The position numbers and the translations under genes are program-made. A stretch of DNA of 64,000 nt, from NCBI GenBank assembly GCA_965235115.1, contig OZ249438.1:37262001-37326000 (forward strand), written 5' to 3'. Within the stretch, counting starts at the first letter, position 1, and each line of letters opens with the position of its first letter. This document shows, in pieces, positions 3,960 to 16,072 of the stretch. A model generated the notes under the pieces. The model ran no database searches. It had not been told where the DNA came from and saw only the letters and a program-made list of their open reading frames with translations. The DNA comes from Laetmonice hystrix (Eukaryota).

Positions 3960-6900
3960 GGGTTAGCGTTCCCTGTTCAGTTGGACCCCAAGAGCTTTCC
4001 CGAAGGGACCTCCTCTGGGTTGCATTGGGAGACCGCTAGTTGGTTGCAGTGATAAATAACTGGCTGGTTATGTTGACACATATCTAGCTGGCCGTTGTGA
4101 CACAGACTCCTCGTTGTGTTGACACATTGCCGACTGATCATGTTGACACATAGCCTGCCGGCCGTTGTAGCCATCCAAGCGGCCTCACGTCCCCCTCCCC
4201 CAGGCCCCCTCCCGCAGACGGGGAGCCCCCTCGGTCTTTTTTACTCTGTGAGGTCCGATGTGGCCGCGGAGAAAGCAACATTCACTTGGACACGGATGCC
4301 TTTTGAAGTCTTGATGTGAAAACGTAGACTTGCTGTACGGCCGGGGGCGGAATCAAATGAAGCAGAGCGCTCTGTGTGGTGGAGAGGACACGTGGTGGAT
4401 TTGTCCACAGGCCAAACAGTCCTACCCACCATCGCTGTTCATGATCAAAAGGACACTGGGAAGTTATTATTGCCCTAATGGGGCAGATTCTCACGTCTGT
4501 GCAATGAGAACCCAATCGTCTTCACCATAAGGATCGTTGTCAGTTCTATGGGCGAGGCAAGCTGGCGTTCACTGGGCGGAGGCGGAAAACACAACCAGAG
4601 TCGGACTGCTGGTTAGCAAGGTTTACCTGGGGAGCGGTTCTTTGTCCAGTATGTTTTCATATCAGTGTTCATCTGCCTAACATACTATTTATAGGACGAC
4701 TTGTAGTACAGGCAGTGGCAAGATGATGTCCTGTCTGATGGGACAATGGTAGAGTAATAATGGAAAGCTAGATCAAATGTATGGGATACACTGCCAGACG
4801 ATCCAACATATAGCGGGCAAAAATGAGGACCCAAAGGGGAAACTGTGAACAGCGGGAGGCAGCCTATAAGCCAGGGAACCGTAATAGGAGAGAAAACACC
4901 CCTCTATTTGCTCATGAGTACCCAGAACCTGGCGTCAGATGTGGGCAGGATCAAATACCCACGATCATACCTATTGCCATGCCCTGTGCTGCTGGCGCTA
5001 GCATCACGCGTGAGTTACTGATGGAACTTAGTGCGATTCAACCAATCGCTGTATCCGGCCCTGAGAGTGTCCGCCAATCAGGAAGCTTCACAGAGATGCC
5101 AGATGTCTGATTGGTCCTCAAATTAAACATAGAAGATGACGCTGTTCTGTCTGTTTAGTTACAGAATTTTCCGGCCCCAAAAGGCAGCCTCTAACATTAC
5201 TCGTACATTCGGCCTAAAACACAACCAGTAAAGTTTGCGTCTATACTCCCAAGTATCACCGGCCGCCAACCAAGGAGAACCTCTTAAGCCTACAAAATTT
5301 CCAAACAAGCCTGATTGCTGTAATCATTTGCTTCCCATTTCTCCGCCACAAAGGTCACGTGTCGTTAGGGACGTCTTTATTTGGAATCCTCCAATCGGAA
5401 CAAACTAGTCACTGATAACGAGGCTGCCATTGTCTGCTGGGGGTCTCGGTGACGGTGGCGCCATGCAGCGGGAAGGTTCCCGGTCAAGGTCGCGAAATGT
5501 TGGCCGAGTTTATTGAGAGGGAGAGAGAGAGCAACAAGCCACTAAATCACATACCGTCACCACTGGCTCCTGGCTCAGCGAGTTGTCAGCGAGGAAATTG
5601 TAAGCTTTGCTCTGATTTGGAATGAGTGTGGTGGGATTCCAACACGCCCTGTTGTGCCATGAGTGTGTCCATGTGACCTGAAGGGGGGGCTGGGGGGAGG
5701 GGTGTCCTCCCTAACCGACTTCATTGACCGACTTGATCTCAGACAGTGATCGCGACGGAGCAGTTCGGATACAACAGTTGATAATAGTTGTAGGTCAAAT
5801 AGGAACAGCTGATAGTTTCGCGTAGGCGATGAAGTCTCGCCATCTTTTGAGGAAGGATAATCGCTATAATGTTTTTTTTTATACAAAAATAGAAGAAATT
5901 AAGTGGTAATGGTTCTCTGTTTATTTCTCTTTATCATTGTTATGAAGCAATTAAAACCTACCTGACTCAAGTATATCGTATAATAATATCGCGTGTACTG
6001 GTTTGCATTGAAAAACGTGTCGAATGTATCTACCAGGATAAATAAATCATTAAAAAAAGGGGGGGGGAGGTTGGCTGGAGCAGTTCGAGGTGCAGGCTGA
6101 AGGCCTGTATTACGGTCTCTTGTCCTCTACCCTTGTCCAGTGCTCTCGACTTGGTCATCAAAGGCCGGGCGTATAACGCTATATCAGCAATATCGACAGT
6201 GTTAGATGTTAAATATCCCTTGACACTTATCGAAAAGGGTAGAACGTTGTCCCGGTGTGAGAGGTTTCATATTCGCCTTAAATGGACGGAATAAATGTGA
6301 AAGACTTGCTGCATAGCTCTTATTGTTACCCAGGAAACCTGGAACGCCATTAGTAAACTCTTGGAACTAAGACGTTAACAAAAACTATTATCTTGTTTAC
6401 AGCTTAGAGAAATTTCAACCATACGCAACGTACGCAATATGAAACCTGTGAGAAAGAAATTATGTTATCTAAGTAAGATTTCATATAAAGTTGACTTCTA
6501 TGACAGTATTGATAGGCACTGTTCGTTTACGAAAGCTCACTGTGCTAATATTGCCCTTGTTCATCCACCACTTCCAGACGAAAACGTTCAGTTGATGGTA
6601 TATACTAACATGGAACATGTCACCGTGATATGGGCATGTAAAATAGACCCGTTCTCTAGCATGTTTGAAGATTAATTCTACATTGAATGGCTTCTTGAAT
6701 GCAGAACGATCAACACGATTGTCAAACCGAAATCCATTAGGCCCACTTGGTTCACGACGGTAATCTGTTTCTATGTGTGCCCTTTTTACCTCAATTTACT
6801 TTCCGTTTTCACAGCAAATTGGATAAACTGAAATGTTGTACCGGTTAATGGTGGCTATGAAACCTCTCTACCCCCTAATTCATGGGAAGATTGAAGCAAC

Positions 6901-11540: not shown

Positions 11541-12015
11541 AGGAATAATGTCAATTTTTTTATATAGCTTTTACAAATTGGCGAAAACCGCTTGTATATA
11601 GTGTGGTAATTATGTTCCATAGCACTGCCTACTTGCCTGATTAGATTTAAATATTTAAAAAGCAGCAAATTTGGAATGACGCGCGTCTTTTTAGCGACAG
11701 AGTTTTAGCCGGGCGACTTTACACCCTTTTTACAGAACGCGAGACTATAGCCGGAATCACGTGATCATCTCACCCGTTGCAACGCTATGTCTGCAGGTCA
11801 GACATTTCCGATGGCGGAAAGCAACGTTGTTTTTGAGTGTTCCCGACAAGAAATGTGGAATGTGAAGGTGACAGCGCATTTCCCTGCTGTCTGTTTACAA
11901 TACATATTAAACCTAGGAAGTATCCTAGAAAATCCTGCATAGATTTTGACGAGGTAAGCGTGAAACCAGGCTGAACTGGCTTCCCGGAACGCTCAACCAG
12001 GGTGGCATGATTCCT
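11541..12015. mobile_element. TTAA-flanked MITE (Kolobok-like)
   Basis: TTAA|AGGAATAATG...CATGATTCCT|TTAA. Confidence 0.6.
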
Positions 12016-12158
12016 TTAAGAAGTGAATCGATTTTTAATTGTTTGACCCTGTTCGTGTTTATGATATCGATGGGTGTGTGGTCCGGGGTGGCGCATTGGT
12101 CAGAGCGCGGGATCGTTATCTTCATCCAAACGTTCTGTGTTTGAGCGATGGGATAGAT

Positions 12159-14903
12159 TACCCAGGGGGCCAGAGGGGTCAAGCAGACATGGTCTGCTGT
12201 AAAAGGTTGTTGTATATGGTTGGATTCCTTAGACCCTCAGTAATAACTTCTAGGTGGACAACCTTTGCAACAAGCTACTGTAACTCCGCAATTCAAGATG
12301 GCGTCCAAGATGGCCGCCATATCTTAAACTCTCCACAATGTCGTCAATTTTTATTGAATTTTCATGTGCAATACCTCGTTTCTATGGTTTTCAGGGTCGG
12401 GAAATCCATTTATGATGGTTTCAGAGTGATAAAGATTGCAATTCAAGATGGCGTCCAAGATGGCCGCCATATCTTATAGTCTCCATAATGTCGTGAATTT
12501 TTATTGAATTTTCATGTGCAATACCTCGTTTCTATGGTTTTCAGGGTCGGGGAATCCATTTATGATGGTTTCAGAGTGATAAATACTGCAATTCAAGATG
12601 GCGTCCAAGATGGCCGCCATATAGTATGAAATCTCCATAATGTCGTCAATTTTCATTTCATTTTCATGTGTAATAGCTGGTTTCTATGGTACTCAGGGTC
12701 AGGGAATCCATTTATGATGGTTTCAGAGTGATAAAGACTGCAATTCAAGATGGCGTCCAAGATGGCCGCCATATATCATGAAATCTCCATAATGTCGTCA
12801 ATTTTCATTTCATTTTCATGTGTAATACCTTGTTTTTGTGGTTTTCAGGGTTGTGGAATCTATTTATGATGGTTTTTAAAGTGATATGATGTGCTTTATA
12901 CCATGTAAATGAAAAACAAACATTAAGGCATAGCCTAAGTACCAATTACTACGTTCGACTTTGACTTAAATCAGTTATAGTCCCGTGACAAAAGCGGCCC
13001 ACCTAAAATCATTGAGGGAATTCCGGAACAAGTGTACTCTTGCTTGTCTGTGGTATAGATGGCTTGCTCTCTCGCTCAATCACTCATTCACTCACCCTGC
13101 CTCAGTCACTCAATCACTTACTCATGCATGTAGTATAGTGGAATATTGCTTGTCTGTTGTGTTGGCTTCTAAGAACTGGTGATGGTATTGGCATTGCAAG
13201 TGTGTGAACCAAGATGACTAGCCAGACAGGGAAGAGAGTTGTTGAAGGAGTTGTGTCATTGGAGCGACCAAAGCAAAGGCGACAGGATCTACTGACTGTT
13301 GACTACAAGAAGTGTGTCATTTGCCAGGCAGAATCACAAAAGGGACCTGTACATGTTACATCAGTAACAAAGCTTATGCGGCCATGACTGCTCGGCAGGA
13401 TGATACTTACAGAAAACTACATGAGCACATAGCCAACGACACGTGGATCACAGACAAATCCCCCAAATGGCATGCAAAATGCAGGAACCTCTACCTCAAT
13501 GAAAAGAGCTATACTGACAGAAAGGAAGCGTCTTGGAACACCAGATAAGGCTGATCAACCCTCAAACAGTACACTTCCCAGGTCACCTATTGCCACCACG
13601 CGAAGCTTTGTTACTGATGTAACATGTACAAGTCCCTTTTGTGATTCTGCCTGGCAAATGACAACTTCTTGTAGTCAACAGTCAGTGGATCCTCTCGCCT
13701 TTTCTTTGGTCGCCCCAATGACACAACTCCTTCAACAACTCTCTTTCCTGTTTGGCTAGTCATCTTGGTTCACACACCTCCAATGCCAATACCATCACCA
13801 GTTCTTAGAAGCCAGCACCACAGACAAGGTGAGTAAATGAGTGATTGACGAGGGAGCGAGCCATCTACCACAGACAAGCAAGAGTACACTTAATCCGGGA
13901 TTCCCTCAAAGATTTTAGGTGGGCCATTTTTGTCAAGGGACTATAACTGATTCAAGTCACAGTCGAACATAGTAATTGGTACTTAATGTTTGTTTTTCAT
14001 TTACATGGTATAAAGCACATCATATCACTTTGAAACCATCATAAATAGATTCCACAACCCTGAAAAACAAGGTATTACACATGAAAATGAAATGAAAATT
14101 GACGACCTTATGGAGATTTCATTATATATGGCGGCCATCTTGGACGCCATCTTGAATTGCAGTCTTTATCACTCTGAAACCATCATAAATGGATTCCCCG
14201 ACCCTGAAAACCATAGAAACGAGGTATTGCACATGAAAATTCAATAAAAATTGACGACATTATGAAGACTTTAATATGTGGTGGCCATCTTGGACGCCAT
14301 CTTGAATTGCAGTCTTTATCACTCTGAAAACCATCATAAATGGATTCCCCGACCCTGAGAACCATAGAAACGAGGTATTACACATGAAAATGAAATGAAA
14401 ATTGATACATTATGGAGATTTCATGTGATATATGGCGGCCATCTTGGACGCCATCTTGAATTGCAGTCTTTATCACTCTGAAACCATCATAAATGGATTC
14501 CCCGACCCTGAAAACCATAGAAACGAGGTATTGCACATGAAAATTCAATAAAAATTGATGACATTATGGAGACTTTAAGATATGGTGGCCATCTTGGACG
14601 CCATCTTGAATTGCAGTCTTTATCACTCTGAAACCATCATAAATGGATTCCTCGACCCTGAAAACCATAGAAACGAGGTATTGCACATGAAAATTCAATA
14701 AAAATTGACGACATTATGGAGACTTTAAGATATGGTGGCCATCTTGGACGCCATCTTGAATTGCGGAGTTACAGTAGCTTGTTGCAAAGGTTGTCCACCT
14801 AGAAGTTATTACTGATGGTCTAAGGAATCCAACCATATCCAACAACCTTTTACAGCAGACCGTGTCTGTTTTCACAAAAAAAGCGTGGCTGGCCCCCTGG
14901 GTA
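12159..14903. mobile_element. Palindromic non-autonomous DNA transposon, Academ-like (TA...TA termini, GAT 3-bp target-site duplication)
   Basis: gat|TACCCAGGGGGCCAG ... CTGGCCCCCTGGGTA|gat. Inverted arms span 12159-13375 and 13603-14903 around a 227-bp spacer. The arms contain ~150-bp subrepeats. Confidence 0.8.
13214..13611 (+). pseudogene. Frameshifted N-terminal remnant of a Cys/His-rich transposon ORF
   Basis: MTSQTGKRVVEG...DYKKCVICQAESQ.../AMTARQDDTYRKLHEH...PKWHAKCRNLYLNEKSY/RKRLG...TRSF. The CxxC plus WHxxC motif resembles the N-termini of large invertebrate transposon proteins (from memory, not searched). Confidence 0.55.
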
Positions 14904-16072
14904 GATCGCTGAAATCGTTCGTCCTTCTACCATCTAAAGCTATACAACGTACGTCGCCGCACTGGTTGGTAGTCCCAGCAACCAGTCGGCGTCAACTTGG
15001 CAGTCGGTGACTGGCCAATGAGCAAAATGGCCGTATCCGGCGGCAACTTGCTTTTTTTATTTTCTTTTATTTTCATTTTTTTTTGGCAAAGCGTAGACAA
15101 CTCAGTGAATACAAACACTGCTTTTCACTGCCACTGTAATACACTGCGGTATATATATGCTCACATTTAAGAATAAGATTTATGTCTACACTCATGGGAA
15201 TCGGGCCAACCATACTCGTGTATTTTCGGAATCGGCTGCCCGGACTCGGATGGACGTAGGGGCCTATTCCAGGCACATGCCATCAGAGGTCGTCCGTCCG
15301 TCGTACGTCCGTACATCCGCCGTCCTACCGGGGTCCGGGGCTGGTGAGATCATACGGCGGTCATCTAGTGACACTGTCGGGAGGTGCCGCCAGGGGTTGC
15401 CGGTAGTTACCTGGGGTGCCGGGCGGGCATCATGACCAGCATCCCTCCTCCCCACACCCACCTCCGTACCCACCAATGATCTCCGTCACGAACCTCCTCC
15501 AGGACCTCGCTAATCACATCACGCTACGCTGGCGTGTACCACCTGCCTACTGGAGGACGCCGCCTAATTTACCCCAGACTGGACGGTCCTCGAGCATCGA
15601 CTGACTCCTACCTCCGGTTGGCGTCAAGTCAGCTGCACTTGACTGTAGTAATCGACTCGTCCCCTAGAGGGCAGCAGCTCATCGTGAGGCCATCACCTCA
15701 TACATGACCTGATGACAAAGTCGACAGGAACCATTGGTTGTCATTTCACGATCCGCCTCCATGGTCGCATATAGATGGAGGCCAGAGTGGGAAACACTTT
15801 CAAACAATGTGTTTGGTGGTCGCACAGTGTTCCATGCTTGCCTTCAGTCACACTTCAAAGCCCTGAGAAAATTAGCTTAGGTCCCGAAGGTTATTGGGCG
15901 GCCATCGTGCCCTTTTTCCATGATCAAATGGATAGCGTTCCTTTCGCTGTTGAGACGCAAGTAAGCGGGCAAGTGTCGCGTTTATTTAACGTTTGTGGTA
16001 CGTGCATGCGGATCTTTTACAGTGTTACTATGTTCCGAGTGAACTTCACTAGTAGTGAACGAAGTGTTTATG

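What the first reader, a model, noticed from the sequence alone, without database searches (positions are those of the whole stretch)
12159..14903. Academ-like element made of two inverted copies of its own 5' end, including the start of its ORF
Seen: the ends are TACCCAGGGGGCCAG and its reverse complement, both flanked by GAT. The inverted arms run inward about 1.2-1.3 kb and include the ATG and first ~54 codons (CVICQ) of an ORF remnant. Symmetry breaks at the self-complementary hexamer AAGCTT (13370-13375 and 13603-13608), leaving a 227-bp spacer that continues the ORF (KWHAKC...TRSF). Established: YR termini with 3-bp target-site duplications characterise AcademX elements. Inference: a template switch at AAGCTT replaced the 3' end with a second 5' end. 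The intact GAT duplication suggests the two-headed product then transposed as a unit. The arms have diverged (4 versus 5 subrepeats), so the event is not recent, or two related copies were fused.
Basis: partly seen in the sequence, partly recalled or inferred. Interest (0 to 1): 0.7.

Follow-up and report, generated by a model that had tools for sequence, protein, structure and literature searches.

The report
Two-headed non-autonomous Academ-type DNA transposon
This is one copy of a mobile, non-coding derivative of a large cut-and-paste DNA transposon, in which the start of the transposase gene was duplicated in inverted orientation; it has spread to at least 25 sites and this insertion is still polymorphic, so the family is probably active, but the kind of element is known.

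Summary
Window 12159-14903 is a 2745-bp element with 15-nt terminal inverted repeats, a GAT duplication on both sides, about 1.2-kb inverted arms (3.9 versus 5.0 subrepeats of about 150 bp) and a 227-bp spacer. It is not an assembly artefact. The same internal junction occurs at 29 loci, at least 25 of them independent insertions. In 13 of 13 copies with both ends readable, a 3-bp duplication lies outside TA...TA termini. Contigs from public runs contain the empty allele with a single GAT.

The genome holds one autonomous relative (6737 bp, intact 1593-aa ORF). Its protein models as a DDE transposase followed by a FEN/XPG-type nuclease, which together with the 3-bp duplication fits AcademX. 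Its natural inverted repeats are only about 470 bp.

- The junction is not at AAGCTT. It lies 7 nt further in, at a 3-nt CCA microhomology (13596-13598).
- The 3' terminus was not replaced. Both native, slightly different termini are kept.

The most likely origin is one aberrant repair or replication event with a template switch, followed by mobilisation in trans. I rate it a new member of a known kind, of moderate interest.

The parts
12156..12158 (.). left copy of the 3-bp target-site duplication (GAT)
   Evidence: the empty allele has a single GAT
12159..12173 (+). 15-nt terminal inverted repeat, left end (starts TA)
12174..12181 (+). A-type subterminal patch (8 nt). In the autonomous copy this type sits at the 3' end
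12288..12875 (+). left-arm array of 3.9 subrepeats (152 bp), each with an ATGGCnGCCAT palindrome
12876..13214 (+). left-arm copy of the region upstream of the transposase ORF (5' leader)
13215..13598 (+). remnant of transposase codons 1 to about 133, broken by two frameshifts. The first part (to 13375) lies in the left arm and the rest forms the spacer
13376..13381 (+). mutated patch in the left arm, shared by all copies, that makes the symmetry appear to stop at AAGCTT (13370-13375)
13596..13598 (.). founding junction: 3-nt microhomology CCA between codon ~133 (forward) and codon ~58 (reverse complement)
13596..13763 (-). right-arm remnant of transposase codons 1 to about 58 (ATG is the complement of 13761-13763), with a 1-nt deletion
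13764..14022 (-). right-arm copy of the 5' leader, with deletions relative to the left arm
14023..14764 (-). right-arm array of 5.0 subrepeats (150 bp)
14870..14888 (-). B-type subterminal patch (19 nt). In the autonomous copy this type sits at the 5' end next to the ORF
14889..14903 (-). 15-nt terminal inverted repeat, right end (ends TA)
14904..14906 (.). right copy of the 3-bp target-site duplication (GAT)

Best explanation
The element is a non-autonomous derivative of an AcademX-type cut-and-paste DNA transposon.

Parent element. The parent type is represented by one 6737-bp copy on another chromosome. It has inverted repeats of about 470 bp (a 15-nt terminus plus 150-bp subrepeats) and a single 1593-aa ORF. 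The ORF encodes N-terminal Cys/His motifs, a DDE transposase with an inserted helical domain, a FEN/XPG-type nuclease and a C-terminal Cys-rich module.

Founding event (inferred). One aberrant DNA-synthesis event, most simply gap repair after excision or a stalled fork, copied the 5' part of the element twice in opposite orientation. One nascent strand ran from the B-type end to about codon 58. The other started at the A-type end, slipped within the homologous inverted subrepeats onto the 5' region, and ran to about codon 133. The two were joined at a 3-nt CCA/TGG microhomology.

Product. It keeps both native termini and all subterminal repeats but no coding capacity. It is therefore cut out and inserted as a unit by transposase supplied in trans, making 3-bp duplications.

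Shown here: the structure, the single shared junction, the unit duplications, the copy number, the empty allele and the protein folds. Inferred: the repair pathway, the order of the strand switches, and which transposase mobilises the element.
For: - Same junction at 29 loci, with the adjacent inverted hit.
- At least 25 independent insertion sites with distinct flanks.
- 3-bp duplication outside the TA...TA termini in 13/13 end pairs, including the autonomous copy and a 759-bp mini derivative.
- Empty allele skipping 2748 bp (element plus one GAT) at about half the local depth in two runs.
- Autonomous copy L061:1065-7801 with an intact ORF of 1593 aa. It is the only close full-length copy in the genome, and its homologues of 1582-1600 aa align over 99-100% of its length.
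- Its inverted repeats stop at about 470 bp, and its 3' end lacks the leader and ORF start.
- The right arm matches the autonomous sequence 7 nt past AAGCTT and the spacer matches it up to codon ~133, overlapping by CCA.
- Every element with both ends readable has one A-type and one B-type end.
- No fixed A-arm versus B-arm differences.
- Nuclease-domain model (pLDDT 85): Foldseek hits at E<=0.001 are all XRN2/Rat1, XRN1 or FEN1; EXO1, T5 FEN and XPG/Rad2 follow at E 2e-3 to 7e-3.
- Transposase-domain model (pLDDT 83): matches ISCth4, Hermes, Transib and RAG1 at Z 6.4-10.2, against at most 4.4 for non-transposase chains.
- Invariant acidic residues lie at the expected positions.
- AcademX is described as making 3-4-bp duplications and encoding a nuclease (PMC10045372; PMC5199201).
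- Microhomology-guided template switching in TIR transposons is documented (PMC8277862).
Against: - No reference Academ transposase could be compared by sequence. Pfam finds no XPG_N/XPG_I and, in the query itself, no family at all; homologues hit only DUF6589, weakly.
- The extant autonomous copy is about 10% diverged from the family consensus in the shared region. It also carries an unrelated 454-bp segment where the two-headed family has 183 bp, so it is not the direct parent.
- Both arms of the window copy resemble the autonomous 3' repeat more than its 5' repeat. The position of the second switch therefore cannot be mapped.
- A 3-nt microhomology is weak statistical evidence on its own.
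- The read evidence comes from short assembled contigs of one sample, not from long reads.
Confidence: 0.8

Rival explanations
1. A simple fold-back. One template switch produced a fully symmetrical element with two identical 5' (B-type) ends. One end later acquired the A-type terminus by gene conversion or recombination with another family member.
For: The arms are 97% alike over the outer 443 nt apart from the 8/19-nt patch. Both arms resemble the same autonomous repeat. Repetitive TIRs recombine readily (PMC8277862).
Against: It needs an extra event. No copy with two B-type or two A-type ends was seen among 13 elements with both ends readable.
Confidence: 0.15
2. Assembly artefact: a palindromic chimera created by the assembler or by fold-back reads.
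For: Long palindromes are a known artefact class, and no long read spanning the centre was available.
Against: The same junction occurs at 29 loci on many chromosomes, each with its own mutations. Independent short-read contigs cover 13533-13631. Unit-flanking duplications are present in 13/13 copies. The filled and empty alleles are both assembled.
Confidence: 0.01
3. Two separate elements inserted head to head, or one inserted into the other, rather than one rearranged element.
For: The arms differ in subrepeat number and by a few percent.
Against: There is no terminus and no duplication at the internal junction. The junction joins codon ~133 to codon ~58 of the same ORF. The junction is identical in all copies. 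The duplication flanks the whole unit, and the empty allele loses the whole unit at once.
Confidence: 0.01
4. The element belongs to another superfamily: a TA-duplicating Tc1/mariner-like element with CCCAGG ends, or a 3-bp-duplicating PIF/Harbinger, CMC or Zator element.
For: TA precedes CCCAGG at nearly every end. Several superfamilies make 3-bp duplications (PMC2213677 abstract for PIF/Harbinger; the others from my own knowledge).
Against: The three bases outside TA are duplicated in 13/13 copies, so TA belongs to the element. The protein is 1593 aa with a FEN/XPG-type nuclease after the DDE domain. It has no Pfam hit to Tc1/mariner, PIF or CMC transposase families.
Confidence: 0.04

Closest known systems
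AcademX lineage of the Academ superfamily (Kapitonov & Jurka 2010; Kojima 2020, cited through PMC10045372)
   Same: 3-bp target-site duplications, terminal inverted repeats, a long element (6.7 kb; bivalve Academ elements average 5.6 kb, PMC10294476), and one large protein combining a DDE transposase with an XPG/FEN-type nuclease.
   Different: Membership rests on architecture, folds and duplication length only; no sequence comparison with a named Academ transposase was possible. The window copy is a non-coding derivative. I found no description of an Academ derivative with an inverted duplication of the 5' region in the papers I could search.
Mu killer of maize (PMC3440606)
   Same: [quoted passage not shown]
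   Different: Mu killer, as far as I recall, is a single locus not known to amplify; its silencing activity is documented in PMC3440606. Here the structure keeps two functional-looking ends, transposes and has at least 25 copies. No silencing activity was tested.
Foldback-type elements and long-TIR non-autonomous derivatives formed by abortive gap repair or template switching (FB4 and Pack-TIRs, PMC8277862)
   Same: Long inverted arms built of tandem subrepeats, variable subrepeat number between copies, microhomology at the rearrangement breakpoint, and mobilisation in trans.
   Different: From my own knowledge, FB elements of Drosophila make 9-bp duplications and belong to another superfamily. 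Here no foreign sequence was captured; the element's own 5' region was duplicated.

Membership tests
AcademX (Academ superfamily) | 3- or 4-bp target-site duplications | tested here: met
   A 3-bp duplication is present in 13/13 end pairs, and the 4th base does not match in the window copy. The empty allele has one GAT. The criterion is taken from PMC10045372 and PMC5199201.
AcademX (Academ superfamily) | RNase H-like DDE transposase | tested here: met
   Model of aa 400-1010 (pLDDT 83) aligns to ISCth4, Hermes, Transib and RAG1 at Z 6.4-10.2, against at most 4.4 for non-transposase chains. Invariant D493, D673 and E928 fall on strand 1, after strand 4, and after the helical insertion. This shows the fold only, not superfamily assignment.
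AcademX (Academ superfamily) | XPG-type nuclease domain in the same protein as the transposase | tested here: met
   Model of aa 1130-1540 (pLDDT 85): Foldseek hits at E<=0.001 are all XRN2/Rat1, XRN1 or FEN1; EXO1, T5 FEN and XPG/Rad2 follow at E 2e-3 to 7e-3. Seven conserved acidic residues have FEN1-like spacing (D1162, D1205, E1309, D1311, D1336, D1338, D1394). Caveat: Pfam XPG_N and XPG_I are not detected by sequence.
AcademX (Academ superfamily) | sequence clustering with reference Academ transposases (Repbase; Yuan & Wessler profile) | not testable with these tools
   No Academ reference sequence or profile is available. Pfam has no Academ model (PMC5751038). Kojima 2020 and Yuan & Wessler 2011 are not held.
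Tc1/mariner | TA target-site duplication and a DDE_1/Tc1-type transposase | tested here: not met
   TA is part of the element, and the duplicated bases lie outside it. No Pfam transposase hit.
PIF/Harbinger | 3-bp duplication plus a PIF-type DDE transposase of a few hundred aa | tested here: not met
   The duplication length fits, but the protein is a single 1593-aa ORF with no Pfam hit to that family and with a nuclease domain.
Foldback (FB) elements | long arms of tandem subrepeats with 9-bp duplications | tested here: not met
   Arms of subrepeats are present, but the duplication is 3 bp. The 9-bp figure is from my own knowledge.
Mu killer-like hairpin silencer | inverted duplication of the transposase 5' region that yields hairpin RNA and small RNAs silencing the autonomous element | not tested
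   The structure is analogous (PMC3440606).

The most novel reading that the evidence does not exclude
The two-headed derivative is more than a passive hitch-hiker. Both arms carry the transposase leader and first 58 codons facing each other, so read-through or convergent transcription would give a hairpin RNA of about 1.2 kb. That would make each of the 25 or more copies a mobile Mu killer-like source of small RNAs against the single autonomous element, a self-spreading brake on an Academ family. A weaker variant is that the palindromic architecture itself favours end synapsis, which would explain why this derivative outnumbers the autonomous (1 copy) and mini (1 copy) forms.
Probability: 0.12. 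Interest if true: 0.6.

Novelty: new member of a known kind. Interest (0 to 1): 0.35.

Why it matters
To my knowledge no Academ transposase has been studied experimentally, and the role of its nuclease domain in making 3-bp duplications is unknown. This genome offers a compact candidate system: one intact 1593-aa ORF, a successful non-autonomous partner with at least 25 insertions, a 759-bp mini derivative, and at least one insertion still segregating. The element also preserves a clean record of how a long-armed palindromic derivative arose. It shows one breakpoint with 3-nt microhomology and one switch inside the natural inverted repeats, which bears on how foldback-like and long-TIR elements originate. 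Beyond that it is an ordinary transposon copy with no sign of a host function.

Tried and rejected
- Pfam on the 1593-aa ORF gave nothing at E<=1.
- A profile search of solved-structure sequences gave nothing.
- Foldseek alone was inconclusive for the DDE domain, so I used the VIA second look.
The second end of about half the copies, and the distant relative on C4, were therefore not examined.
- Kojima 2020 and Yuan & Wessler 2011 are not in the library. A literature search for Academ in echinoderms returned only 'Academy' noise.
- I considered a switch at AAGCTT and rejected it: 7 further nt of the right arm match the autonomous sequence exactly in most copies.
- I considered a 5-bp TAGAT duplication, because the empty-site joint has 5 ambiguous letters. 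I rejected it because other copies do not show it.
- I looked for arm-specific fixed differences that would indicate fusion of two diverged copies and found none. The alignment is noisy in the CTCA-rich, indel-prone stretch.
- Earlier notes of this scan for this place: none.

Full report
**1. The observation**

- A 15-nt terminus beginning TA lies at 12159-12173, with its reverse complement at 14889-14903.
- GAT lies directly outside both ends (12156-12158 and 14904-14906).
- The repeat finder gives a nested series of inverted pairs from the termini inward: 443 nt at 97%, 120 nt at 92%, 165 nt at 94% and 61 nt at 98%. They end at 13375 and 13603 with 227 nt between.
- Tandem Repeats Finder gives 3.9 copies of a 152-bp unit in the left arm and 5.0 copies of a 150-bp unit in the right arm.
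- One detail was missed. After the shared 15 nt the two ends differ: 8 nt on the left (here 'A-type') against 19 nt on the right ('B-type'). The arms become alike again after that.

**2. It is a multicopy mobile element, not an artefact**

- A search of the window's own 627-Mb assembly with the terminal 132 nt gave 40 scored matches.
- A search with 13200-13620, which crosses the inner junction, gave full-length or near-full-length matches at 29 two-headed loci. They are 91-99% identical, and an inverted hit of the first 176 nt lies directly adjacent in most of them.
- An alignment of the junction from these loci shows the same join in all two-headed copies. L054 in that alignment is the autonomous copy; L051 and L055 are only partly covered.
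- Reading the flanks of every terminus in the fetched loci gives at least 25 different insertion sites.
- In every case where both ends could be read, the three bases outside the TA...TA termini are duplicated. That is 11 elements within single loci plus the pairs L002/L045 and L009/L055. The duplications are GAT, GTT, TAA, AAA, TAT, ATC, TTA, GAT, CTA, AGA, AAA, TTA and CTC. In the window copy the fourth base does not match, so the duplication is 3 bp and TA belongs to the element.
- Element lengths range from 2544 to 3528 bp. I attribute this mostly to differences in subrepeat number.

**3. Empty site**

Contigs of three public runs from one sample were laid on 11700-15400.
- In two runs a contig joins 12153 to 14902. 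It skips 2748 bp, which is the 2745-bp element plus one GAT. Five letters are ambiguous because the left flank happens to read TA before GAT.
- This contig carries its own nearby variants: two substitutions and two small deletions at 12118-12135. It has about half of the local depth (33.9 of 60, and 43.5 of 83).
- The insertion is therefore polymorphic, probably heterozygous in the sequenced animal, and the unoccupied allele has exactly one GAT.
- Other contigs cover 13533-13631 across the inner junction.
- These are assembled short contigs from one sample. They show presence, but they are not long-read proof.

**4. The autonomous relative**

- One pair of ends lies 6.7 kb apart (L061:1065-7801, 6737 bp, duplication CTA). 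It contains one ORF of 1593 aa whose first residues are those of the window remnant.
- A search with its 4.7-kb interior found only itself and one distant relative of 65-69% identity on another chromosome.
- The inverted repeats of this copy run for about 470 bp (36-470 against 6712-6287, 92.7%). Its 3' part has no copy of the leader or of the ORF start. The 1.2-kb arms of the window element are therefore a derived feature.
- In the autonomous copy the B-type end lies next to the ORF start and the A-type end lies at the 3' end.

**5. The protein**

- Pfam finds nothing in the ORF.
- The word-based protein search found 16 close full-length or partial homologues, best 59% identity to a Strongylocentrotus purpuratus protein. 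Several are 1582-1600 aa and align over 99-100% of the ORF, so the ORF is intact. Some carry a weak DUF6589 match. The host is thus probably an echinoderm, though I did not establish this.
- A model of aa 1130-1540 (pLDDT 85) matches only 5'-nuclease family members among its Foldseek hits at E<=0.001: XRN2/Rat1, XRN1 and FEN1. EXO1, T5 flap endonuclease and XPG/Rad2 follow at E 2e-3 to 7e-3. The alignment has conserved acidic residues with FEN1-like order and spacing.
- A model of aa 400-1010 (pLDDT 83) aligns to ISCth4, Hermes, Transib and RAG1 at Z 6.4-10.2, with non-transposase chains at 4.4 or below. Invariant D493, D673 and E928 lie on strand 1, after strand 4 and after a long helical insertion, which is the layout of these DDE transposases.
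- The C-terminus is a Cys-rich module, and the N-terminus has CxxC...HxxC motifs.

**6. Superfamily**

AcademX elements are described as making 3- or 4-bp duplications and as encoding a nuclease, in contrast to the helicase-encoding AcademH lineage (PMC10045372; 3 bp also in PMC5199201). From my own recollection of Kojima 2020, AcademX encodes one protein with a transposase and an XPG nuclease. The architecture, folds and duplication length found here fit. A direct sequence comparison with a named Academ transposase was not possible: there is no Pfam model (PMC5751038) and the key papers are not held. A TA-duplicating element is excluded by the flanks. PIF/Harbinger and the other 3-bp families are not supported by the protein.

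**7. How the two-headed form arose**

Aligning the autonomous 5' region with the left arm plus spacer, and with the reverse complement of the right arm, shows three things.
- The spacer follows the ORF up to about codon 133.
- The right arm follows it up to about codon 58. That is 7 nt beyond AAGCTT, and these 7 nt are identical to the autonomous sequence in most copies. In the window copy, 13600 carries a private A-to-G change, which the read contigs also flag.
- The two segments overlap by CCA at 13596-13598.

Symmetry seems to end at AAGCTT only because the left arm has a 1-nt deletion and substitutions at 13376-13381, shared by all copies. The palindromic hexamer is therefore incidental, and the join is a 3-nt microhomology.

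All 13 elements with both ends readable have one A-type and one B-type end: the two-headed copies, the autonomous copy and a 759-bp mini derivative. The arm that continues into the spacer carries the A-type end, which in the autonomous copy is the 3' end. That arm is therefore a chimera of the native 3' terminus and an inverted copy of the 5' region. The change-over must lie inside the natural inverted repeats, where it cannot be mapped, because both arms resemble the autonomous 3' repeat more than its 5' repeat.

The simplest mechanism, which I infer and have not shown, is repair synthesis after excision or at a stalled fork.
- One nascent strand copies from the B end to codon 58.
- The other copies the A end, re-anneals within the inverted subrepeats to the 5' side, and copies to codon 133.
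- The two 3' ends pair through CCA/TGG.

Microhomology-guided template switching of this kind is documented for TIR transposons (PMC8277862). A fully symmetrical fold-back followed by conversion of one end is a weaker alternative.

**8. Age and the 'two fused copies' idea**

In the 300 nt next to the spacer there is no column that separates A arms from B arms. Arms of one copy are no more alike than arms of different copies (median 94.7% against 95.5%). The alignment is noisy in a CTCA-rich, indel-prone stretch. This fits arms that were identical at the founding event and diverged along a star-like amplification, not a fusion of two diverged copies. Copies differ from each other by 1-9%, so the founder is old relative to this still-polymorphic insertion.

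The extant autonomous copy is about 10% diverged from the family consensus in the shared region. It also carries 454 unrelated bp where the family has 183 bp. It is therefore a relative of the parent, not the parent itself. Whether it supplies the transposase is an inference.

**9. Function**

The element has no coding capacity: its ORF remnants are frameshifted. It most likely behaves as a trans-mobilised parasite of the autonomous element.

Its structure is the same in outline as maize Mu killer, an inverted duplication of the 5' part of a transposase gene with two copies of the adjacent terminal repeat that silences the autonomous element through a hairpin RNA (PMC3440606). Whether these copies produce such RNA was not tested.

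**10. Verdict**

This is a new family member and derivative within a known superfamily. Its moderate interest lies in being an apparently active Academ system with a well-preserved origin of a palindromic derivative.

Noticed in passing
L036, L037, L038, L040, L044, L056, L059, L060 (eight loci on seven chromosomes): A truncated two-headed copy (A arm cut inside the subrepeats, B end intact) lies in the same context at all eight loci. The flanks are 92-98% alike for about 660-710 bp on the A-arm side and about 570-585 bp on the B-end side. The copy therefore rides as a passenger inside another, larger repeat that has itself spread.
   Followed up: partly
L021:874-1632: A 759-bp mini derivative of the same family, made only of a B-type end, subrepeats and an A-type end, flanked by AAA.
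   Followed up: partly
window 11700-12071, especially 11936-12020: Contig depth is 100 to 1000 times that of the unique flank, with many loose ends at 11936 and 12019/12020. A very high-copy short repeat sits just upstream of the insertion.
   Followed up: no
window 12310-12320, 12460-12470, 12610-12620, 12762-12772, 14128-14138, 14432-14442: Each well-preserved subrepeat carries an ATGGCnGCCAT palindrome next to a doubled AAGATGGC motif: 6 exact matches in the window against 0.04 expected. This is a candidate binding site for the transposase or a host factor. An earlier first-reader note of this scan (s1-330590) mentions periodic palindromes in an Academ end elsewhere in this genome.
   Followed up: partly
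G000:C4:33615749-33621283: A second, distant relative of the autonomous element (65-69% nucleotide identity over four pieces).
   Followed up: no
L062:5925-5974 and 6826-6877: Two pieces of about 50 nt, 100% and 96% identical to adjacent parts of the transposase N-terminal coding region (codons ~87-120), lie 850 bp apart with nothing else of the family nearby. This could be a fragment split by an insertion or small captured pieces.
   Followed up: partly
L012 and L013 (G000:C11, 16.4 kb apart): Two copies with the same flank apart from a 1-nt offset, suggesting a local segmental duplication that includes the element.
   Followed up: no
L061:6824-7063: A tandem repeat with a period of about 90 bp (95-97% identity between copies) overlaps the end of the transposase ORF and the start of the 3' untranslated part of the autonomous copy.
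   Followed up: no
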